Below, one piece after another: positions 1 to 15,191 of a stretch of DNA of 64,000 bases. The notes under the pieces are model-generated. The model saw only the letters and a list, made by a program, of their open reading frames with translations, searched no databases and was not told the DNA's origin. Where the stretch lies: the NCBI GenBank assembly GCA_001179505.1, contig CDMY01000138.1, positions 120,244 through 184,243 on the forward strand, given 5' to 3'. The translations under genes and the position numbers were made by a program. This DNA is from Vitrella brassicaformis CCMP3155. Taxonomy: Eukaryota; Protista; Chromerida. Each line of letters begins with the position of its first letter. Within the stretch, counting starts at the first letter, position 1.

Positions 1-77
1 AGCCGACACAAACAAACGTTGCTCACCTGTCTGTCTGTGTGTGCGTGTGTCTATGGCTTACATACGCATCTGCGTAG

Positions 78-1489
78 AGCCCTATCGACATCAGGAAGGA
101 CGAGGTGAAGAAGGGGGCGTCGGTGGTCAGCTTCTTTTACCCGCCACTGGAGGAGGAAATCACCATCTTCTGGTCAGCCTGCTGCCCTCTCGTTGTATAC
201 ACGAAAATGCACTTTGTGTGTCTGTGTGTGTGCACAGGAACGATATATTCGTGGACGGAGAGCTGAGGGATCCGGACGGCACAGAGGACTTTGGGTATCT
301 CCAGTACCAATCAAAGAAATTCGTCGCCGTGTCGTAAGCAAGCCAAGCCAGAACGCACACCTGCCTGCCTGCCTGCCTTCCTGCCTTGATTGTGCCCTGC
401 TCCTTGTCCAGCTTTCACTTCCACTCACGGTCGGAACACACGTTCGACGGCAAACAGTTCCCCCTGGAGATGCACATTGTGCACGTGCGAACCGACAATG
501 ATCAAACCCTGCGTGAGTGGCCCACAGAATGACTGCTTTACTGCCTTACTGCTGGTCTGTCTGTCTGTGTGTCGACTGACTGACAGCTGAGTTTGCGGTT
601 CTCGGTTTTCTGTTCGCGGAAGGCCCAAAGACGAATACGTTCCTTCGGTCTCTCGGTAAGCACATTCACGTGCGGCTGCGGAACGATTTTCATAGAATGT
701 GTGCACACGCGGGTGTCATTCGGTGCACATATATGCAGAAAACCCAGATGGCAGGCCCAGGATCCCTTCAGTCGATGCGCCAGACGTCATGTATACAGTC
801 GACGCAGACCTCTCCGAGCTCGGCCAGTTCGCAGCGGATTCCAAGATCTTCCACTACCCTGGTTCGCTCACAACGCCCCCCTGCACGCAGGCAAGCGACT
901 ATCACAGGGGAATTCGCCTCTTAATCGGTGGAGCTTGCGTCTTTCTTGCCCTGCTTGTCAGGCTGTGAATTGGTTTGTGGTTGCGGAGCCCTTGCTGGCA
1001 AAGGAAGAGCAGCTCGACTTGTGGGTGAATGCCAACCTCAACGGAAACAGCTTTAGACTCACGCAAAACCCCGAAGTCATCGACGGACAGGTGAACGATT
1101 CACAGGGCACGTTGAGGAACGGCTCGCATGTTGCGCTGTGCGGTGGTGTGCCTGTTCAGACGACGCAGAGGAACGAGCTGGTGGACAGGTTTGGGGTCCT
1201 GAAAATCAATGCCGACTTTGTGCCGTCGCTGTTACCGGTTGAGGCAGGAGTGGTCCCAGACAGTCCCGTGTTCCCTGACGAGATGCGAGATGCAGTCATG
1301 ATGGCATTAGCAAGAGCTGAGAAAAGGGCAAGCTTGTTCGGCCACTTGCAGACAGCAGAGAGAGAGCGACATGGCCCAGCAGAGGGAGAGAGCGACATGT
1401 GGCTCTCTGACATCCTCAATTCTCTGAAGGCAAAGCTGGATCAAAGACACACACAAGTGATGGGAGGGAGCCCGTACGGACTGAACTGA
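78..1489 (+). CDS. Alpha-class carbonic anhydrase, 5' partial, multi-exon, with a C-terminal extension
   Basis: Spliced exons give SPIDI (from 78), FHFHSRSEHTFDGKQFPLEMHIVH (zinc-binding His triad), EFAVLGFLF, FHYPGSLTTPPCTQ|AVNWFVV and NSFRLTQ. These are the standard alpha-CA motifs in order. Stop at 1487-1489. The start lies upstream of the window. Confidence 0.92.
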
Positions 1490-2727: not shown

Positions 2728-5700
2728 GAGTTTGCTATGTGTCGTTTTTCTCAATATGCATGTCATCGAAAACATCCGCCCAAAAAGTCAGCTGTGGACA
2801 CACGTGTGTGGGTGAATGACTAACTCACTACTCAGCATACCTATCTGGTTGGCAGATGTAAGGTTGTCCTTTGATGGCATGCAATTTTGAGTGCGCGTGT
2901 GTCTCCCTCCGTATGGTCGGCTGCCTGGCTGGCTGAGTGTGTGTGGTCAGCAGTCATGTGACGATGTGTGGCGTGTGTCTACATAAAGGGGGGCAGCGAA
3001 GGGGACGCAAAGGCGCCCTTCTCTGCACGTCTTGTGCGCTTTGTGCGCGTTTCATACAGTTTCAAGTGAATGGACAGTCGAGCAGTATATGCCACACCAT
3101 GTGCCTCGCAGACAGAGACTCCAAGGGGGAAAGATGAAGAGACACCGATCGACAAGAAACGTGATTCCTCACTGTGTGGATGGATGAATGGATATCGCAA
3201 AATTGCTGGTGTTTGGCATCGACTTCCGCGCCCCTAAACGATTACGGGATGGTACAGCCGTCAGCTTCACGGCCAGCACTCACGATCACGCACACATCGC
3301 AAGGGAGGAAAACATAGGAGCAGACTCTTCATTGGCGACTGTGTCCGTACAAATGCATGGATGGGATAAGTGGCTGGCTGCATGAATGGACTAAGTCCTT
3401 CCCTCGTCAAAACTGCCGCAGACTACAACCACGTGTGCATTGACGTGTCTGCCTGTCCATCCATCCGTCCATATGTGTGAATGGTCTACATGAAAGCCTG
3501 TACAACCATTTGGCCATGAAATGTGTGAGCGTGTACAATGAAAAAGAGCGAAGAAGCCAAACGTATAATGAAACGCACGAAGGCAGCAGACAGTTCACGG
3601 CAGTGTTTAATGCCTCATGTGAGAGAGTGAGAGAGAGCGGGAGAGACGCGTAAGCAGGAAGGCAGGCAGGCTCTCTAGGTACTCAGTACATAAAAACACT
3701 CGCATCGCATTTAATGGCTTACAAAAGCATTCCATCTGGCTGGGCAAGATCAATACCGATTATAGATAGCCTCGTATTCACGCTCCTCAATCCCTAGTAG
3801 CTCATGACAGGGACAGACACACACACAAATTGCACTCACAGGTACGTACGAAGGTAGGAAGGCAGAGGCAGCACTCTTCAGCTGTCCCTCATGCGCTATC
3901 CCTTTGAAATGCCAAAAGGAGGCCTTGCAATGGGCCACATTAGATCGTGAACACTGGAAAAATGTAAAGCGGAGGCGCTATTTACCGCCTCCTGTCTGGC
4001 CCTGCGAATCGTGTCACAGCCGCCCGTGTGTCATCGCCGAGGACGAATGATCCCTCCAGCTTAACAACGTCGTCAGCCGCCTCAAACAGACTGAACCCTG
4101 GGCCATTCGTCTGCCGATATATTTGTACACATCGAGAGCATCACATAAGCAAGCACCATAGACAGATGCAAAGAGCGCTGTATGTATGTATGTATGCATG
4201 CAATCTTCGTCGACCGACTCGCCTACCAGTATTGTTGCCACTGCGTCCACAGTGCCCGCCCGCAACTCGTCGACGAGTTCAGTGATGGGAATCTCGACGA
4301 GTGTCACCTCCAGGCCCAGCTCCTGTGTGACCGCGACGAAGTCGTCGATAAAGAAACACCCGGGGCAGACGCCAACACTCTTGCTGCAGCCACAACAAAT
4401 CCAGCCAAGCGTTACTTACATATACAATGCGCCCTCACTCTCCCCACCCGTCTAGAGAAGAGGGGTCCTCCGTCACGTCAACTGTCGCCAATTCAGAGTC
4501 TTCCTCGACCCACACACCGACCTCGTTAACGAAGCTGCACACACATACACGGACCGACTTATTCAGTGAGCTGACCGACTCATTCAAAGAGCGTGTATAC
4601 TTGACGATGGCGCAGCTCGTATAATCTACCGACTGCGAACGTTCCTCAGTAACCTGATGAGAGAACAAGGCGACGAGCATCAAAGTCGTACGCTTCCACC
4701 CACTCTGACGTACAGAGAAGAAGGTAATGGCATCAACAGTCTCGTCATTCAAAGCCTCTCTAAACTGGAGGAAGAAATCTTCTGTGTTGTCAATAATCGT
4801 GTAATTGGCCTTGATGTCTACGCCATACTCCTAACGGCAAAACAAGCGAGGACCAGAGATGAGGCAACTTGGCCGATATACTTAAAGCGTCGTATGCTGC
4901 ATGTACCCTTGATAGCTCGGGCAGAATCAGCTCATTGACGGCAACATAGTAAGCACCTACACTCCCCGGCTCGGTGGGATCGCTAATGATTGACAGGCCA
5001 ATCTCGAGAATGCCTTCGTCCAGCACCTGCAAGACGCGGAGCCCTCGCATTGACTGACTGGTCCCGTTCTCCTGCCTACCTTCTCAAAGGTTCCCTCGGC
5101 GTCTTCTTTGGCAGGGTAGGAAGCTTCGCAGTCGGGGAAATCAAAGGAGGCCAAAGGGAAGGTAGCATTCAACACGGACAAATGCTCATCCGACTCGCGG
5201 ACCTGAAGCAGACAATGAAACATTTGCAATTGTTTCGGTTATGGATGTGGACCACCTACGTTCTTAATGGCAGTGCTGAGGGCTGCGTTAAGCTGGACGT
5301 CTCCATCGTCACCCGTCACGTAGGGGTTTGCTGGCTCCTTGATCCTCAGGAACTCCAGCAGGTCATCGAGGAGCTCCTCTAGGTCTGCCTTGCTGACCTC
5401 CAGCTGCTTCTCACCCAGCTCCTCGGGGGCGGCCGCCGCCAACCACAACGAAAGAAGGAGGCCGCCGAGGAGAGAGAATACCGAGGGAACCGAGGGGCGT
5501 GACATAAGGTTCCTGTTTGGAGTAGTTTCGGGGCCGCCCGTGTGCGAAGTGCCTCATGCGCCGTTGGGATGGCCAGATTTTCGATGCCAGCCAAATTGAC
5601 TGACGCTGAGCGCAGTGATGACGTCACGGTGACGATGCTGGACGAGAAGAAGATTCGTCGAAGGATAAAGGGATGGACAGATAGAAAGGTACCCAGACAG

Positions 5701-5834
5701 AGATACACAGACCAGCTCCTTTGTTCAGGGTGTGCAGATGCACTCTGCCACATTTTCGTTTCCCGCTTCTGAGTTTTCCCGCTTCTGAGTTTTGTAAAAG
5801 ACACAACAAATTAAAACGAGACAGAGGACACGAG
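2728..5834. repeat. Segmental duplication, copy A (direct repeat of 11957-15191)
   Basis: Colinear similarity seen by eye from gagtttgct(a/g)tgtgtcgtttttctcaat (~2728 vs ~11957) to gaggacacgag (5834 vs 15191), covering introns and flanking non-coding DNA. Confidence 0.88.
3982..5505 (-). CDS. Secreted extracellular solute-binding protein family 3 (PBPb/SBP_bac_3-like), about 340 aa, 8 exons
   Basis: Phase-consistent exons 5505-5260, 5202-5080, 5026-4907, 4830-4714, 4653-4601, 4534-4448, 4383-4227 and 4110-3982. Signal peptide MSRPSVPSVFSLLGGLLLSLWLAAAA. Type-2 periplasmic-binding motifs: GILEIGL, ALNDETVDAITFFSVTEERSQSVDYT, SLDGKSVGVCPG and ELRAGTVDAV. The 3' end is uncertain because a possible donor (gtaaat) overlaps the stop. 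Confidence 0.78.
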
Positions 5835-7364
5835 CTGAGTGAACTTGCCGACGACGACGAGAATCGCGACATCAGAGCTCCCGCCCGCCCCCCACCCTCA
5901 CATCCCTCACATCCATCACAACCGTCACCGGCCTCTCTACCGGCCAAGGGCGCCACTGGCAGGTGCCGTCACTCGAGAGGGTGCACATCAAGAGGCCGAG
6001 AAGCTGGGGCATTTCGGGAGGGTGGGTGGAGCAGGAAACGTTGGGGGGGCTGGTGGCGTCGTCGCGGTGCCTGAAGCAGCTTCAGGTGGAATGCACTGCT
6101 GAGGCTATGGCTGAGTCGCTGAGGTGCATCCCTGTGGCAGCTGCTGGCCAGCCGGGCCACCTGGTGCAACTCGAGGAGATCGGGACCCTCAGCGTGTTGA
6201 GTGCCAGCGCTGAGAGTTTAAAGCGCCTTCAGGTGTGCGACGAGTCACACAAGACACACAAGATCAGAGAGAGTGGGCGCGAGCTTGCTGCATGTGAGTT
6301 TTGTCTCTGTGCACGCCGTCCTTGTCGACCGTGGCTGCCGCTCCAGCAAGAGGCTCTGCGTCAAGTTCGAGGACTCCGACATCGACAGCAGCCTCTTCGC
6401 GCCCTGTCGACCATTGAGGCTTTCACCCGCACCGTGTGTGTGAGGCCTGACATCCCCGTCGACATCAACGTCAGCTGCTACTTCGACCTTGGCCTTCTGT
6501 GTGAGGTCCCCACCCGCCCCGCCCCCTCATTCTTCGTGCAGAAGCACATCCAGCAGCTGGCCGCCAGAGCCCTCAGGGCGTCCTTTAGCCTTCGTCCCCG
6601 CCATCTGCCCAGCCCTCTGGACACACCCAGCACCGCTGCCAGCGTTCTCGCGGAATGTGGTGATCACGGGGCCGCACGATTGGGGACCTGACGCTGATGC
6701 CGAGGAGCCCGACCCAGTTGTGCTGGACAGCATGCCCGAGAACGCATTCCCCGCCGCGTCGTCACTATTCCTTTATACCTGCAAGGGGCACGTGATTGCG
6801 CGCAGGCTGCTGACCAAGATGCCCGTCGTGAGGAGAATCCAGCTGTTTTGTAGACACAACTCGACAGAGGAGCAAACGGTGGGTGTGCTGCAGACGGTGG
6901 GCGGGGAGGGGCAGCTGGAGTATTTCGATGTCAGAACCCTGACGGGTGTGGGTGAGGGGGGGCTTGGGTGGGGGGACATAGCGGACAAGCTGCCGACCAT
7001 CTCAGCGCTGTTGATTATCGTACAAGGTGACCAAGTGACCAACAATTAATCGCCTCCATACCTGCCGACTGACCACTCTGATGTCGGCTGCCATCTGTCT
7101 GTGTGTGTGCAGTGCCTGAGGCTTTACGCGGTAGCGATGCCGCCGGCGAGTTCGGCATTGCCTGCGTCAAGTCGCTGCTCAAGATCCGAGGCATCAACCG
7201 ACTTCACTTCGGGCTGGACCAAGCTGGAGGATATAGTTTGAAGCGGCTGGTGGAGGAGCGGACTAATGGCGACACCAATCGATGGGCTTGAGGGGCGGTA
7301 TTGCATCGAGTGGGGCTGGGGGGAAGACTCGGATTTCCTCAATCTCGAACGGCTTGACGCCTAG
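5835..7364 (+). pseudogene. 5'-truncated, frameshifted paralogue of the 8040-10330 gene
   Basis: Matches the 3' two-thirds of 8040-10330 (RHWQVPSLERV, AIEAFTRTVC, PTRPAPSFFVQKHIQQLAA, AAGEFGIACVKSLLKI). It begins at the duplication edge (5835), has several frameshifts, and the acceptor reads gtgcac where the intact copy has gtgcag. Confidence 0.8.
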
Positions 7365-8039: not shown

Positions 8040-10330
8040 ATGACTGAGTCGGCATCGAAGCGACAGACTCTGAGGCGGGCTGAGGGAGAGGATGACTCGG
8101 ATGACGGACACCAGGAGGCCGTAATGGACTCCGACGGCCAGCAGCAGCAGCAGCAGCAGGCCACGGCATCGCACACCACTCACAGCATAGATTTGGAGGC
8201 CTTCGCTCTTCGCTTCGGCCAAATCGTAAGATGCAGCCACCAAGACCACTGGCAAACACACACATCCTCATCGTTTCCTCTCTCTGTGTCTGTGTGGTGT
8301 GTGTTGACACTCAGCCGGTTGTCGTCGCCTACGTCTTTTCGTTCGTGTCACTTCATTTGGTGGCGGCGCTGCCCCAGCGGCTGTGGCGCCACGTCGGCTC
8401 CCAGATCACCCGGCTGGTCATGGACACCTACGACACGGCCGAGCGGCGCTTCTGGTGCGGCCTGTCATTCGCCGAAGCCTTCGAGTGGGGCCGGCGGCTC
8501 ACACCGCTCAACTCAATTGTCGTCAAGTATCCCTATGCCCTCCGCATCCCCAGTGAAACTCCTGGCCACCGCATCCCTCATCGGCGGGGGCGACACGATG
8601 ATGACCGCCACTCTCTGTCGCCGGTGAACAAGAAGATCTTCACGGCATTGGTGGAGGGCCACAGCGAGGGGCGGAGAGCCGCAGCGGCCACAGCAGCCGG
8701 GCAGCAGGCGCCAACCACCTTGGAGTCCATCGACATAAGCGAGGGCCAATCGGCCATAGTCGTCGACGAGGACGAGGGTCGCGACATAGGAGCTGGACAG
8801 CTGGCGACGGTCAACCCGCCCCTCAACCCGCCCCTCAACCCGCCCCTGACCCTCACATCGCGCAAGGGCATTACCACCAGCGGATATGGGCTCTCCTGTC
8901 CCGGCCGCGGGCGCCACTGGCAGCTGCCGTCGCTTGAGAGAGTCCAGGTGCGAGAAATGGTGGATTACGGTGAGGTGTTGGGGGACCTGGTGGCCACGTC
9001 ACGGCGCCTCAAGGAGCTGCAGGTGGAATGCACTGCCGCGAAGCTGGCTGGGTCGCTGCGGCGCATCCCCACGGCAGCGGCCGGCGGGCCGGGCCCGCTG
9101 TCACAGCTCGAGGACATCGGAACCCTCATCGTGAGAGCTGGCGCCGGGGGTCTGGAGGGCCTGCAGGTGAGCAGCGAACCACACAAGATAAACTAGATCA
9201 GACAGAGTGGGGGAAGGCTTGCTTGTGATGTGCGTGTCTGTGTGCAGAGGGTTCTTGTCGACCGTGGCTGCCGCTCCATCAAGAAGCTCAGCATCAAGTT
9301 CAAGGGCTCCGACATCGACAGCAGCATCTTCGAGACCCTCTCGGCCATCGAGACCTTCACCCGCACCGTCTGTGAGAGGCCTGACATCCCCGTTGACATC
9401 GACGAGGCCGACGAGCGCTTCGACCTCGACATCCTGTGTGAGGTCCCCACCCGCCCCGCCCCCTCATTCTTCGTGCAGAAGCACATCCAGCAGCTGGCCG
9501 CCAAAGCCCTCGAAGTGTTCTTCGACACCCTTCCCAACCACCTCACCGCCCCTCACGACACGCCCAGCCCCGCTGCCATCGTCCTCACATCATCCCTGAC
9601 ATTCCCCAAGGCGACGAGGGTGGAGGTGGTGGACCAGGATGATGATGATGATGATGATTGGGAGCCTGACGATGACGCCGAACAGCCCGACCCACTTGTG
9701 CTGGACAGCATGCCCCACAACGCATTCCCCGCCGCATGGGCGCTGACCGTCCACAGCCGCAAGGGGTACGCCATTGGCCGCAGGCTGGTGACCAAGATGC
9801 CAGCAGTCAAGAGCATTCTTCTCTTCGACCCGACAGAGGAGCAAGCAGTGGGGGTGCTGCAGGCGGTGGGCGGGAAGGGGCAGCTGGAGTATTTCGATGT
9901 CAGAACCACCCTGACGGGTGTGGGTGAGGGCGGGCTGACGTGGGGGGACATGGCGGATCAGCTGCCCACCATCAAAGAGCTGCGTGTTCGTGTAGAGGGT
10001 GAGCTGCAAGCAATCGCCTCAATCAGCTCTCCCTCCTGCCTACTTGTGTGTGCAGTGCCTGAGGATTTGGGTGATGGCGATGCCGCTGGCGAGTTCGGCA
10101 TTGCCTGCGTCAAGTCGCTGCTCAAGATCCAAGGCATCGAGGAGCTCATTTTGCAGCCGGGGCCCAACGAGGCCTTCAAGCGGCTGGTGGAGGAGCGGAC
10201 TGATGGCGACAGAATCGAGGGGCTGGAGGGGCGGTATGACATCAGCTGGACGGATGATGAGGAAGATGAGGAAGATGAGGAAGGTGCGCTCATTCTCATA
10301 CCACTCGACGCTGCCGGCCTGGCTGGATGA
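8040..10330 (+). CDS. Uncharacterised lineage-expanded family protein with a degenerate N-terminal F-box-like segment, 4 exons
   Basis: Exons 8040-8225, 8315-9166, 9248-9998 and 10056-10330 with GT-AG introns; the last intron is 57 nt, in frame and stop-free. IPVVVAYVFSFVSLHLVAALPQRLWRHVG resembles an F-box. Repeated LxxL-type segments (LPSLERV, LKELQV, LSQLEDIGTL) suggest LRR-like units. NPPL is repeated three times. Confidence 0.85.
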
Positions 10331-11956: not shown

Positions 11957-14900
11957 GAGTTTGCTGTGTGTCGTTTTTCTCAATGTGCACGTCACCGAAT
12001 ATGGACGCCCTATGTCGTGGGCGAGCCGGGCTGCATTGCACATACCAATGTGTGGCAGACGTAATGCTGTTGTGTGATGGCATGCTGTTTGGAGTGCGCG
12101 TGTGTGTGTCTCCGTATGGTTGGCTGCCTGGCTGAGTGTGTGTCGGTCAGCGGTCATGTGACGATGTGTGGCGTGTGTCTACATAATGTTAAGGGAGGCA
12201 GCGACGCAAAAAGGACGCAAAGGCGCCCTTCTCTGCACGTCTTGTGCGCTTTGTGCGCGTTTCATACAGTTTCAAGTGAGCGGACAGTGGAGCAGTATGC
12301 GACACATCCTTTCCGATGGGACAGTAATGCATATCACTGGTGCCGCACCTCCATGTGCCTCGCATCACCATATGCAGGATTGACAGAGACTCCATGGGGG
12401 GGAAAGAAGAAGAGACACCGATCGACAAGTAGAATTGTTGGTGTTTGGCATTGACTTCCGCGCCCCTGTATTATTACGTGATGGTACAGCCTTCAGCTTC
12501 ACGGCCAGCACTCACGATCACGCACACATCGCAAGGGAGGGAAACACAGTAGCAGACTCATTCATTCGCGACTGAGTCCAAGCAAAGGCATGGGATAAGT
12601 CGCTGGCTGCATGAATGGACTAGGTCCTTCCGTCAAAACTGCAACAGACAACCACGTGTGGATTGACGTGTCTGCCTGTCCATCCATGTGTGTGAACGGT
12701 CCACATGAAAGCCTGTACAACCATTTGTCCATGAAATGCGTGAACGTGTACGAATTTCACCGAATGAAAGAGATCGAAGAAGCCCTTAGACCATGAGACT
12801 GGCACGTAGGTCAGGATAACATGTTCACGGCATTATTTAATGCCTCATGTGAGAAAGTGAGAGAGAGCGGGAGAGACGCGCAGGGGGTACAAATACCAAA
12901 TGTATGCATACGTACGCAGACCAGCTCAGACCACGTCATGTGTTTGGTCGTGTCTGGTGCGTGGCTAAGAATGTGCGAAAAACAGGCTCTCTAGGCTCAC
13001 AGGCTCGTGGAAAATTCATACTCAGTACATAAAAACACCCACATCCATTGGCTTACGAAAGCATTCCATCTGGGCAAAATAGATAGGTACCAATTATAGA
13101 CAGCCTCGTATTCACGCTCCTTAATCCCTAGTAGCTCATGACAGGAAGGAGAGGCACACACACACACACAAATTTCATACACAGGTACGTACGAAGGTAG
13201 GAAGGCAGAGGCAGCATTCTTCATCGAAGCGACACATTCATGTAGGGATCGCCCCCCCATAATTCTGCCTGCTGTCTGGCCCTGCGAATCGTGTCACAGC
13301 CGCCCTTGTGTCATCGCCGAGGACGAATGATCCCTCCAGCTTAACAACGTCGTCAGCCGCCTCAAACAGACTGAACCCTGGGCCATTCGTCTGCCGATTT
13401 ATTTGTACACAGCGAAAGCATCACATAAGCAGCGTAGACAAATGAATGCAAAGAGCGCTGTATCTATGTAATCTTCGTCGACCGACTCGCCCACCTACCA
13501 GGATTGTTGCCACTGCGTCCACGGGGCCATCCCGCAACTCGTCGACGAGTTCAGAGATGGGAATCTCGACCAGTGTAATGTCGAGTCCCTGGTAAAGGGG
13601 AGCGGGTAAAGGGGAGACAAGAAGGGCTGTCTGTCTGATGGGCGATTGTTACCAGCTCCTGCGTGACCGCGACGAAGTCGTCGATGAAAAAACACCCAGG
13701 GCACACGCCAATACTCTTGCTGCAGCCACAACGACACAATCCAGCCAAGCATTACATTGCGCCCTCACTCTCCCCACCCACCCGTCTAGAGAAGAGGGGT
13801 CCTCCGTCAGGTCAACTGTCACCAACTCAGAGTCTTCCTCTACGCACACACCGACCTCGTTAACGAAGCTGCACACACATACACGGACCGACTCTTTCAG
13901 TGAGCTGACCGACTCATTCAGTGAGCGTCCGTGTATACTTGACGATGGCGCAGCTCGTATAGTCTACCGACTGCGAACGTTCCTCAGTGACCTGATGAGA
14001 GAGAATAAGTCGACGAGAATAGGTCGACGATCATGTGCTTCTCTGACTGACGTACAGAGAAGAAGGTAATGGCATCAACAACCTCGTCATTCAAAGCCTC
14101 TCTAAACTGGAGGAAGAAATCTTCTGTGTTGTCAATGATCGTGTAGTTGGCCTTGATGTCTACGCCATACTCCTGACGGCAAAACAAGCGAGGACCACCA
14201 GAGATGAATGAGGTAACTTGGACGATATACTTAAAGCGTCGTATGCTGCATGTACCCTTGAAAGCTCGGGGAGAATCAGCTCATTGAGCAACATAGTAAG
14301 CACCTACACTCCCCGGCTCGGTGGGATCGCTAATGATTGACAGGCCAATCTCGAGAATGCCTTCGTCCAGCACCTGCAAGACGCGGAGCCCTCGCATTGA
14401 GTCGTTCTGTGCGGTCTCCTCCCTACCTTCTCAAAGGTGCCCTCGGCGTCTTCTTTGGCAGGGTAGGAAGCTTCGCAGTCGGGGAAATCAGAGGAGGCCA
14501 AAGGGAAGGTAGCATTCAACAGATCTAAATGATCGTTAGACTCACCGACCTGAAGCAGACAATGAGAAATGTGTTTCGGTTATGGATGTGGACCACCTAC
14601 GTACGTTCTTGATGGCAGTGCTGAGAGCTGCGTTAAGCTAGACGTCTCCATCGTCACCCGTCACGTAGGGGTTTGCTGGCTCCTTGATGCCCGTCAGGAA
14701 CTCCTTGATGCCCGTCAGGAGCTCCTCTAGGTCTGCCTTGCTGACCTCCAGCTGCTTCTCACCCGGCTCCCCGGGGGCAGCTGCCGCCAACCACAACGAA
14801 AGAAGGAGGGCGCCGAGGAGAGAAAATACTGAGGGGCGTGACATAGGGTTCCTGTCCAGAGCAGTTTCGAGTACCTCACGTTCTTGCGCTGCCGCATGCG

Positions 14901-15191
14901 CCGTTGGGATGGCCAGGTTTGCGATGCCAGCCAAATTGACTGAAGCTGAGCGCAGTGATGACATCACGGTGACGATGGTGGACGGGGGAGAAGAAGCGTC
15001 AAAGGATAAAGGGGTGGACAGATAGAGAGGTACCCAGACAGAGAGATACACAGACAGCTGTGCAGATGCACACTGCAACATTTTCTCTTCCCCGCTCCAT
15101 TTTCTTTTGCCTCTTGGTGTCTAGTTCCTGAGGATGTGGGTCTGAGTTTTGCGAAAGACACAACAAATTGAAACGCGATAGAGGACACGAG
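11957..15191. repeat. Segmental duplication, copy B (direct repeat of 2728-5834)
   Basis: Same colinear similarity as copy A. Copy B carries extra sequence at ~12880-12985 and a 64-nt intron at 13589-13652. Confidence 0.88.
13238..14844 (-). pseudogene. Pseudogene copy of the solute-binding protein family 3 gene
   Basis: ATG at 14844 and the same exons as 3982-5505. It has a CAG>TAG nonsense codon at 14638-14640 and a 2-nt deletion between 14287 and 14288 (the cg at 4939-4940 in copy A). It also has a 21-nt in-frame tandem duplication (LTGIKEF/LTGIKE) and one extra intron. Confidence 0.82.

What the first reader, a model, noticed from the sequence alone, without database searches (positions are those of the whole stretch)
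3982..5505. Stand-alone secreted bacterial-type solute-binding protein (family 3) with a CPGC motif
Seen: an 8-exon minus-strand gene that the ORF track does not reveal, with a signal peptide, VTEERSQSVDY, LDGKSVGVCPGC and LRAGTVDAV, and no transmembrane segment after the domain. Established: these are type-2 periplasmic-binding (SBP_bac_3/iGluR ligand-binding) motifs, normally partnered with ABC permeases in bacteria or fused to channels in eukaryotes. Inference: a free extracellular amino-acid or ligand scavenger or sensor, possibly of horizontal origin. CPGC sits where V.xGT-type lobe-2 residues usually lie and could act as a redox or metal switch.
Basis: partly seen in the sequence, partly recalled or inferred. 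Interest (0 to 1): 0.7.

Follow-up and report, generated by a model that had tools for sequence, protein, structure and literature searches.

The report
Secreted solute-binding-type protein gene in Vitrella
This is an intact, intron-rich gene of the alga Vitrella brassicaformis for a soluble secreted protein with a bacterial-type "flytrap" ligand-binding fold; it is real but already in public annotation, and is one of at least six Vitrella copies.

Summary
An 8-exon, all GT-AG, minus-strand gene (5505..3982) encodes 343 aa. This is letter for letter the public protein CEL93118.1 / UniProt A0A0G4EC91 of Vitrella brassicaformis, which is already auto-named "Solute-binding protein family 3".

- **Fold:** It has a signal peptide, a roughly 90-aa helical N-terminal extension, and one divergent family-3 (PBP type 2) domain. 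Pfam gives 30.7 bits against a cut-off of 26.4, and the predicted structure matches amino-acid-binding proteins.
- **No membrane part:** There is no transmembrane segment. Transcript contigs show the last intron spliced as modelled, and the last exon plus at least 741 nt of 3'UTR colinear with the genome. No membrane exons follow.
- **Family:** It belongs to a family of at least six copies found only in Vitrella (dN/dS 0.23-0.30). A decaying tandem copy lies 9 kb away. Earlier notes of this scan flagged similar genes on other DNA of this genome.
- **Binding site:** The carboxylate-clamp Arg (TxxR) and a C-x-[G/N]-C motif at the lobe-2 ligand loop are invariant. The Asp that holds the alpha-amino group in classical binders is Ile or Leu.
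- **Closest solved structure:** Plasmodium PfVFT1 is the top match for this protein, but that rank was not reproduced with a paralogue, and no sequence link was found.

Ligand, partner, a redox role and horizontal origin remain untested. The finding is ordinary to moderately interesting.

The parts
3982..5505 (-). Gene A: 8-exon CDS of the 343-aa secreted SBP-type protein (CEL93118.1 / A0A0G4EC91)
   Evidence: The model equals public protein P0006. All introns are GT..AG.
5428..5505 (-). Signal peptide coding part (aa 1-26, in exon 1)
   Evidence: This is the only hydrophobic stretch (mean Kyte-Doolittle 1.9 over 19 aa), followed by AAAA then PEE. All paralogues have the same layout.
5080..5427 (-). 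N-terminal helical extension (aa 27-123; rest of exon 1, intron 1, exon 2), carrying conserved Cys107
   Evidence: helices 39-55, 67-83, 87-96; pLDDT 60-90 from aa 61. Conserved in paralogues. No Pfam family.
4621..4653 (-). Lobe-1 ligand motif VTEERSQSVDY (aa 203-213). Thr204 and Arg207 are invariant in the family.
   Evidence: Aligns to the TxxR motif of AncQR and CjaA. Invariant columns. Model confidence is low here (pLDDT below 50 for aa 200-214).
4356..4367 (-). CPGC (aa 255-258) at the strand-to-helix turn of lobe 2
   Evidence: Aligns to 'QLGS' of AncQR GVQLGS. Cys255 and Cys258 are invariant in the paralogues. Strand 251-254 and helix 261-270 flank it in the model.
4239..4265 (-). LRAGTVDAV (aa 289-297), lobe-2 strand motif. 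The following Ile300 replaces the alpha-ammonium-binding Asp of classical binders.
   Evidence: alignment (VDAVATI against VDAVVTD). Paralogues have Ile or Leu at this position.
3241..3981 (-). 3' untranslated region (minimum extent), colinear with the last exon
   Evidence: Transcript contigs L007 (969-1839) and L008 (951-1765) match window 4111-3241 and 4111-3297 at 99.8-100% without gaps. Intron 7 is removed exactly as modelled.
13258..14844 (-). Tandem paralogue B, about 85% identical in DNA and decaying. It has an in-frame TAG at 14640-14638, a 2-nt deletion after 14288, and an extra 64-nt intron at 13652-13589. It is annotated publicly as two genes (108 aa and 201 aa).
   Evidence: B-type 3' sequence with the 64-nt intron removed occurs in transcript-derived proteins P0016 and P0018.

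Best explanation
**What it is.** Gene A is an intact nuclear gene of Vitrella brassicaformis, and at least its 3' part is transcribed. It makes a soluble, very acidic protein of about 35 kDa that enters the secretory pathway through a cleavable signal peptide. The mature protein is a helical N-terminal extension followed by one bilobed 'Venus flytrap' domain of the bacterial family-3 (class F, PBP type 2) solute-binding kind. The usual C-terminal helices are missing. It is one of at least six paralogues found only in Vitrella, and these are kept under purifying selection.

**Most likely mechanism (inferred).** The cleft between the lobes binds a small carboxylate-bearing molecule. Binding would use the retained lobe-1 Thr/Ser-x-x-Arg clamp and the N-terminal turn of the lobe-2 helix. 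In this family that turn carries a conserved C-x-G-C, which in the oxidising secretory pathway is probably a small disulfide loop that shapes the site. The alpha-ammonium-binding Asp is absent, so the ligand is probably not a standard alpha-amino acid.

Eukaryotes lack SBP-dependent ABC importers, and no such genes flank any copy. The loaded protein therefore most likely acts as a soluble receptor or retention protein at the cell surface or in a lumen, and hands ligand or signal to an unidentified membrane partner.

**Shown:** gene structure, identity, fold class, absence of a membrane segment, the 3' end, the family and the selection on it.

**Inferred:** secretion, ligand class, the disulfide and the partner.
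For: - **Gene model:** it equals the public protein.
- **Domain and sequence links:** Pfam SBP_bac_3 scores above the gathering cut-off. The family profile hits the cysteine-binding protein CjaA 1xt8 (E 1.9e-4) and AncQR 4zv1 (E 0.015).
- **Structure:** AF2 model, pLDDT 70, pTM 0.59. Foldseek gives 279 PDB hits at E <= 1e-3, and the 50 shown are mostly amino-acid-binding proteins or sensors built from them. VIA Z is 11-14.7 over aa 113-334. Atlas structure hits are all SBP_bac_3 clusters.
- **Topology:** one N-terminal hydrophobic segment only, and D+E 68 against K+R 20 in the mature protein.
- **3' end:** colinear in transcript contigs.
- **Family:** paralogues P0019, P0013, P0014 and P0007. 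Spliced transcripts exist for P0014 and C. dN/dS is 0.23-0.30.
- **Conserved residues:** Thr204, Arg207, Cys216, Cys255 and Cys258 are invariant.
- **Context:** no ABC-transporter or channel genes within 10 kb of any of five loci.
Against: - No ligand, localisation or partner was tested.
- The TEER segment is modelled with low confidence (pLDDT below 50 for aa 200-214), and the alignment behind the model has only 6 sequences.
- Expression of exons 1-6 of copy A specifically was not shown. The transcript contigs carrying A's 3' end are assembler chimeras with paralogue C. Two exact-match scans for A's 5' splice junctions found nothing.
- Loss of the alpha-ammonium Asp and of the C-terminal helices could mean that ligand binding has been lost or changed altogether.
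Confidence: 0.6

Rival explanations
1. The Vitrella family is the chromerid counterpart (true homologue) of Plasmodium falciparum PfVFT1. PfVFT1 is a signal-peptide-bearing, anchorless flytrap protein of about 35 kDa and unknown function. On this reading the design would date back to the common ancestor of chromerids and apicomplexans.
For: 5jkq (PfVFT1) is the best match for the model of this protein among 48,161 PDB representatives: Z 14.7, rmsd 5.2, 239 residues aligned. It is the only match that covers the N-terminal helices as well as the flytrap (model 55-333 against chain 22-295), and it has the highest Foldseek TM-scores. The architecture is the same: signal peptide, about 300 aa, no anchor (PMC13199436). 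Vitrella is a close free-living relative of apicomplexans (PMC4501334).
Against: Identity in the structural alignment is only 11-14%. The family profile does not find 5jkq in the PDB even at E <= 10, while it does find bacterial CjaA and AncQR. With the model of paralogue P0014, PfVFT1 drops to rank 7 (Z 10.8), within 1 Z of bacterial binders. PfVFT1 is reported only from P. falciparum, P. reichenowi and P. gaboni (PMC13199436), so vertical descent would require many losses.
Confidence: 0.18
2. The flytrap has been re-used for something other than reversible ligand capture. It could be an enzyme (as cyclohexadienyl dehydratase evolved from family-3 binders), or a structural or adhesive wall or matrix protein.
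For: The alpha-ammonium Asp is lost and the C-terminal helices are missing. The protein is extremely acidic. The family is multi-copy and lineage-specific. Cyclohexadienyl-dehydratase-type structures are among the fold matches (5t0w; 8cq4 and 5wjp).
Against: The carboxylate-clamp Thr/Arg and the lobe-2 loop are invariant under purifying selection, as expected for a retained binding site. No catalytic signature was tested or seen.
Confidence: 0.12
3. The CxGC pair is a redox- or metal-responsive switch that gates ligand binding.
For: Cys255 and Cys258 are invariant in the paralogues. They sit at a strand-to-helix turn, the local context typical of redox-active CxxC motifs (secondary structure; the generalisation is from my own knowledge). 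The position is exactly that of the ligand-contacting loop.
Against: No thioredoxin fold is present. In the secretory pathway the pair may simply be a structural disulfide, or each Cys may pair with Cys107 or Cys216. No experiment was done.
Confidence: 0.08
4. It is the ligand-binding part of a longer receptor or channel gene whose membrane exons lie downstream.
For: Other Vitrella genes noted by this scan fuse solute-binding domains to membrane bodies (unchecked notes).
Against: Transcript contigs run from exon 8 through the TAA and at least 741 nt further without any splice. The downstream 2.5 kb has only short, low-complexity ORFs. The next annotated gene is a convergent alpha-carbonic anhydrase. 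Paralogues P0014 and C end at the equivalent place in full transcripts.
Confidence: 0.02

Closest known systems
Bacterial class F / family 3 amino-acid-binding proteins (Pfam PF00497; e.g. Peb1A 2v25, CjaA 1xt8, ArgBP, LAO/HisJ, AncQR 4zv1)
   Same: Signal peptide and a bilobed PBP type-2 fold. The lobe-1 TxxR carboxylate clamp and the lobe-2 'GKxVGV-xxG-x' loop and 'G-x-VDAV' strand are recognisable by sequence and by structure (Z 11-13.6).
   Different: It is eukaryotic, with 7 introns and no ABC permease or ATPase partner nearby. It has a roughly 90-aa helical N-terminal extension and lacks the C-terminal helices. The alpha-ammonium Asp is replaced by Ile or Leu. CxGC stands in place of the x-x-G-[ST] ligand loop. 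The sequence is very divergent (about 15-20% identity).
PfVFT1 (PF3D7_0606800, PDB 5jkq), Plasmodium falciparum Venus flytrap protein
   Same: [quoted passage not shown] It is the best and longest structural match to this protein's model (Z 14.7, 239 residues aligned).
   Different: No detectable sequence similarity. The top rank was not reproduced with a paralogue model. PfVFT1 is restricted to Laverania (PMC13199436). Homology is unproven.
PBPb homologues of photosynthetic chromalveolates and Euglena (Nosenko & Bhattacharya 2007, PMC2064935)
   Same: These are stand-alone bacterial-type periplasmic-binding-protein homologues in algae. They are not predicted to be plastid proteins, and they were interpreted as bacterial gene transfer followed by spread among eukaryotes.
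   Different: I could not fetch those sequences. None appeared among the relatives of this protein, so the Vitrella family may be a separate or much-diverged lineage.
Ionotropic glutamate receptor / plant GLR ligand-binding domains
   Same: Same PBP type-2 fold (GLR3.2, GLR3.4 and GluR0 at Z 10.3-11.1).
   Different: There is no channel segment between or after the lobes, and no Lig_chan or Lig_chan-Glu_bd Pfam hit. They score below the bacterial binders.

Membership tests
SBP_bac_3 (PF00497), class F solute-binding proteins | Whole-protein score above Pfam's gathering cut-off | tested here: met
   30.7 bits against 26.4, E 2.9e-7, two stretches. Paralogues score 27.4-30.6 bits.
SBP_bac_3 (PF00497), class F solute-binding proteins | Bilobed PBP type-2 fold | tested here: met
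   AF2 model. Foldseek prob 1.00 to many family-3 structures. VIA Z up to 13.6 for bacterial members over aa 113-334. This rests on a predicted model, not a solved structure.
SBP_bac_3 (PF00497), class F solute-binding proteins | Lobe-1 Ser/Thr-x-x-Arg clamp for the ligand's carboxylate (Arg77 of LAO/HisJ; numbering from my own knowledge) | tested here: met
   Thr204 and Arg207 align to the TEER / TPQR motifs of AncQR and CjaA. They are invariant in the family.
SBP_bac_3 (PF00497), class F solute-binding proteins | Lobe-2 Asp that binds the alpha-ammonium group of amino-acid ligands (Asp161 of LAO/HisJ) | tested here: not met
   VDAVATI aligns to VDAVVTD, so Ile300 stands at the Asp position. 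Paralogues have Ile or Leu. This feature defines the amino-acid-binding subgroup, not the Pfam family.
SBP_bac_3 (PF00497), class F solute-binding proteins | Works with an ABC importer (or other cognate membrane partner) encoded nearby | tested here: not met
   No ABC, channel or kinase genes lie within 10 kb of gene A or of four paralogues. Gene clustering is not expected in a eukaryote, so this is weak evidence.
Ionotropic glutamate receptor ligand-binding domain | Channel-forming membrane segments joined to the flytrap, with Lig_chan Pfam domains | tested here: not met
   No hydrophobic segment after aa 26. No Lig_chan hits. The transcript ends without further exons.
PfVFT1-type apicomplexan flytrap proteins | Sequence homology to PF3D7_0606800 | tested here: inconclusive
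   The family profile does not reach 5jkq at E <= 10. A profile-profile test could not be run because no reference to the PfVFT1 sequence was available.
PfVFT1-type apicomplexan flytrap proteins | Closest structural neighbour, including the N-terminal extension | tested here: inconclusive
   Rank 1 for this protein (Z 14.7 against 13.6 for the next). Rank 7 (Z 10.8, tied with others) for paralogue P0014, though still the longest alignment at 221 residues.
Thioredoxin-like redox CxxC proteins | Thioredoxin fold with CxxC at the N-terminus of a helix | tested here: not met
   The fold is PBP type 2. Only the local strand-CxxC-helix context resembles it.

The most novel reading that the evidence does not exclude
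The Vitrella family and Plasmodium PfVFT1 descend from one secreted flytrap protein with an N-terminal helical extension, already present in the free-living ancestor of chromerids and apicomplexans. If so, Vitrella would offer a tractable, non-parasitic system with several paralogues in which to find the ligand and partner of PfVFT1, an orphan malaria blood-stage antigen of unknown function.
Probability: 0.18. Interest if true: 0.6.

Novelty: new member of a known kind. Interest (0 to 1): 0.3.

Why it matters
Free bacterial-type binding proteins in eukaryotes pose a simple question: what do they hand their ligand to, when eukaryotes lack the bacterial importers? Vitrella has at least six conserved secreted copies with an altered binding site, in which the carboxylate clamp is kept, the amino clamp is lost and a CxGC loop is gained. 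This makes a small, testable case of how that fold is re-used. The structural resemblance to PfVFT1 is a lead worth one proper profile-profile test, because PfVFT1's function is unknown. Otherwise the gene is an ordinary, already annotated member of a very large superfamily.

Tried and rejected
1. **Exon-by-exon family scans** (Pfam, NCBIfam). Only exon 7 gave a sub-threshold SBP_bac_3 hit. The weak Phasin and RAP-1 hits of exon 1 are chance.
2. **Exhaustive HMMER search with exon 7 alone**. It found only Vitrella proteins plus three spurious repeat proteins (abalone VERL, an Enterococcus Ig-like protein and an ENA repeat protein). A 52-aa query is too short to reach bacterial relatives.
3. 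**Word-index searches with the full protein and the family profile**. No relative was found outside Vitrella. The method needs shared 5-mers and scored at most 8000 candidates, so distant kin are not excluded.
5. **Two exact-match scans of metagenome contigs** for A-specific spliced junctions (exon 1/2 and exon 4/5). Both gave 0 hits. It is unknown whether that collection holds the Vitrella transcriptomes, so this says nothing.
6. **MMETSP 'complete' transcript P0012** (71% identical). I first took it for an orthologue or a gene-conversion product. It is a chimeric assembly of paralogue C's 5' part and A's 3' part, joined in a 60-nt identical stretch.
7. **Recent bacterial transfer.** Rejected because of the introns, the host-like GC3 (0.67), the multi-copy family and the absence of a close bacterial hit.
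8. **Plastid targeting.** Rejected because the region after the signal peptide is acidic and not transit-peptide-like (inference).
9. **Disulfide geometry.** It could not be measured because model coordinates are not exposed.
10. **Papers.** No paper mentions the accession numbers. Parker et al. 2017 (PMC5563136) is not held.

**Note on method.** The joined spliced model was never typed or sent to a search tool. Exons were searched by reference. All full-length searches used the database protein P0006, which a tool returned and which equals the model. Joining was done only inside scripts, to check frame and identity and to compute dN/dS.
Full report
**Observation.**
Reading the minus strand of 3500-6200 and assembling the exons in a script gives eight exons: 5505-5260, 5202-5080, 5026-4907, 4830-4714, 4653-4601, 4534-4448, 4383-4227 and 4110-3982. 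The seven introns are GT..AG and measure 57, 53, 76, 60, 66, 64 and 116 nt. The frame is open for 343 codons to TAA at 3984-3982. ATG 5505 is the first start codon after an in-frame stop.

The only hydrophobic segment is aa 5-26, ending in AAAA followed by PEE. The mature part is very acidic (68 D+E against 20 K+R). It has four Cys (107, 216, 255, 258) and two N-x-S/T sequons.

**Identity of the gene and organism.**
Only exon 7 gave a family hit (SBP_bac_3, E 6e-4, below cut-off).

An exhaustive HMMER search with exon 7 followed by a cluster look-up returned P0006. This is CEL93118.1 / UniProt A0A0G4EC91 of Vitrella brassicaformis CCMP3155, named by UniProt [quoted passage not shown]. It is identical to my model. 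The public annotation of contig CDMY01000138.1 carries the same 343-aa gene. From here on I used P0006. The joined model itself was never sent to a search.

The earlier scan note that this genome is Vitrella is therefore confirmed. No paper in the library mentions the accession numbers. The chromerid genome paper does not discuss solute-binding proteins.

**Fold and family.**
- **Pfam:** the whole protein passes Pfam's cut-off for SBP_bac_3 (30.7 against 26.4 bits).
- **PDB by sequence:** a profile of the Vitrella family hits the cysteine-binding protein CjaA (1xt8, E 1.9e-4) and the reconstructed Gln/Arg binder AncQR (4zv1, E 0.015).
- **Predicted structure:** an AlphaFold2 model (6-sequence alignment, pLDDT 70, pTM 0.59) shows a helical extension at aa 39-96 and then alternating strands and helices in two lobes.
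- **Structure searches:** Foldseek finds 279 PDB chains at E <= 1e-3, and the top ranks are amino-acid-binding proteins. VIA-align gives Z 11-13.6 for them over aa 113-334, both in the second-look mode and against all 48,161 PDB representatives. ESM Atlas searches give only SBP_bac_3 clusters.
- **Receptor domains:** plant GLR and GluR0 ligand-binding domains score lower (Z 10.3-11.1), and there is no Lig_chan Pfam hit.

The PBP type-2 fold is therefore supported, and the protein is nearer to bacterial binders than to receptor domains.

**Is it really stand-alone?**
- No transmembrane-like segment follows the signal peptide.
- The 2.5 kb downstream on the minus strand holds only short ORFs in low-complexity DNA.
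- The next annotated gene is a convergent alpha-carbonic anhydrase.
- Two transcript contigs from JGI samples 3300017297 and 3300017148 (L007, L008) match window 4376-4227 and then 4111-3241 / 4111-3297 at 99.8-100%. Intron 7 is removed exactly as modelled, and the last exon runs through the stop codon and at least 741 nt further without a splice.

These contigs are assembler chimeras. Their first roughly 760 coding nt come from paralogue C, joined to A in a 60-nt stretch where the two are identical. C's own 3' end is in L009. The genomic C locus has an N gap there.

So transcription and 3' processing of A are shown. Expression of A's exons 1-6 specifically is not shown.

**The family.**
Relatives were found only in Vitrella:
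- A (this gene).
- B, a tandem copy at 14844-13258 inside a direct segmental duplication (2836-5834 matching 12041-15191, about 85% identical).
- C (P0019; genome annotation P0015 is truncated by the gap).
- P0013, P0014 and P0007, on four other contigs.

Intronless transcript contigs exist for P0014 (L003) and C (L009-L012).

B is decaying. It has an in-frame TAG at 14640-14638, a 2-nt deletion after 14288, and an extra 64-nt GT..AG intron at 13652-13589. B-type 3' sequence with that intron removed nevertheless appears in transcript-derived proteins.

Pairwise dN/dS among A, C and P0014 is 0.23-0.30, although dS is near saturation for the most distant pairs. No ABC-transporter, channel or kinase genes flank any copy.

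**Binding site.**
In the HMMER alignments to AncQR and CjaA:
- FFSVTEER aligns with the lobe-1 'iT-x-x-R' motif. Thr204 and Arg207 are invariant in the family. From established knowledge of LAO/HisJ, this Arg (Arg77) clamps the ligand's alpha-carboxylate.
- GKSVGVCPGC aligns with GKKVGVQLGS. The paralogues have CPGC, CGGC, CDNC and CDGC, so both Cys are invariant.
- VDAVATI aligns with VDAVVTD. The Asp that binds the alpha-ammonium group in classical amino-acid binders is Ile300 here, and Ile or Leu in all paralogues.

I infer a retained anion/carboxylate site but not a canonical alpha-amino-acid site.

Cys216 is invariant, and Cys107 is conserved wherever exon 2 is present. The possible disulfide pairings are therefore 255-258 with 107-216, or crosswise. 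I could not measure distances, and the TEER segment has pLDDT below 50.

**PfVFT1.**
The single best structural match to the model of A is 5jkq, P. falciparum PfVFT1 (Z 14.7, rmsd 5.2, 239 aligned residues, model 55-333 against chain 22-295). It is the only match that also covers the N-terminal helices.

PfVFT1 is a signal-peptide protein of about 35 kDa without an anchor. Its function is unknown, and it is reported only from Laverania (PMC13199436; PMC3245289 lists it as P. falciparum-specific). The parallel is attractive because chromerids are the free-living relatives of apicomplexans.

Three things count against a specific link. Identity is 11-14%. The family profile does not detect 5jkq at E <= 10. 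With a model of paralogue P0014 (pLDDT 67), PfVFT1 falls to rank 7 (Z 10.8), tied with bacterial binders, although it is still the longest alignment. I rate true homology at about 0.18.

**Origin.**
Stand-alone PBPb homologues in photosynthetic chromalveolates and Euglena were described in 2007 and interpreted as gene transfer (PMC2064935). SBP_bac_3 genes transferred into anaerobic fungi are also reported (PMC11291939).

For this family, any transfer would be old and no donor can be named. It has seven introns, host-like composition (GC3 0.67) and at least six diverged copies, and no bacterial relative is closer than profile E about 1e-4.

**Verdict.**
The stand-alone secretory family-3 flytrap and the placement of CPGC are right. 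The scavenger or sensor role, the redox switch and the horizontal origin are untested.

The gene is already in public annotation with the same model and domain name. Other notes of this scan flag similar genes elsewhere in the genome. It is a new, uncharacterised member of a known kind, with one moderately interesting lead (PfVFT1).

Noticed in passing
window 13258-14844 (minus strand): Tandem paralogue B of the gene. It has an in-frame TAG (14640-14638) and a 2-nt deletion (after 14288). It is annotated publicly as two separate genes (108 aa and 201 aa), yet B-type 3' sequence is present in transcript assemblies. It is likely a transcribed pseudogene, unless these are assembly errors.
   Followed up: partly
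window 13589-13652: A 64-nt GT..AG intron is present in copy B's exon 7 and absent at the same site in copy A (4316/4317). Transcript-derived proteins P0016 and P0018 read straight across it, so it is spliced. This is a recent intron gain or loss between 85%-identical copies, and is the subject of scan note s1-252842.
   Followed up: partly
window 5884-7307 and 8839-10243 (plus strand): Two paralogous plus-strand genes (73% identical in DNA; annotated as 391 aa and 687 aa) lie between the two SBP copies. They have no Pfam family. The first starts only about 80 nt from the ATG of gene A, head to head.
   Followed up: partly
window 1-1489 (plus strand): Convergent neighbour is an alpha-carbonic anhydrase. 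The FHYPGSLTTPPC motif lies in ORF 699-968. Pfam Carb_anhydrase hits that piece at E 3e-4, and the annotated 377-aa gene carries PF00194.
   Followed up: partly
L005 4707-5006 (CDMY01000492.1): An assembly gap (300 N) lies inside exon 7 of paralogue C. It truncates the public protein CEM17627.1 to 244 aa. Transcript contigs L009-L012 give the full 337-aa product.
   Followed up: yes
L007, L008 and MMETSP proteins P0012, P0016, P0017, P0018: Transcriptome assemblies contain every combination of paralogue C's 5' half with A-type or B-type exon 7 and exon 8. These are assembler chimeras through a shared 60-nt stretch. Such 'complete' ORFs in public protein sets are not real genes.
   Followed up: yes
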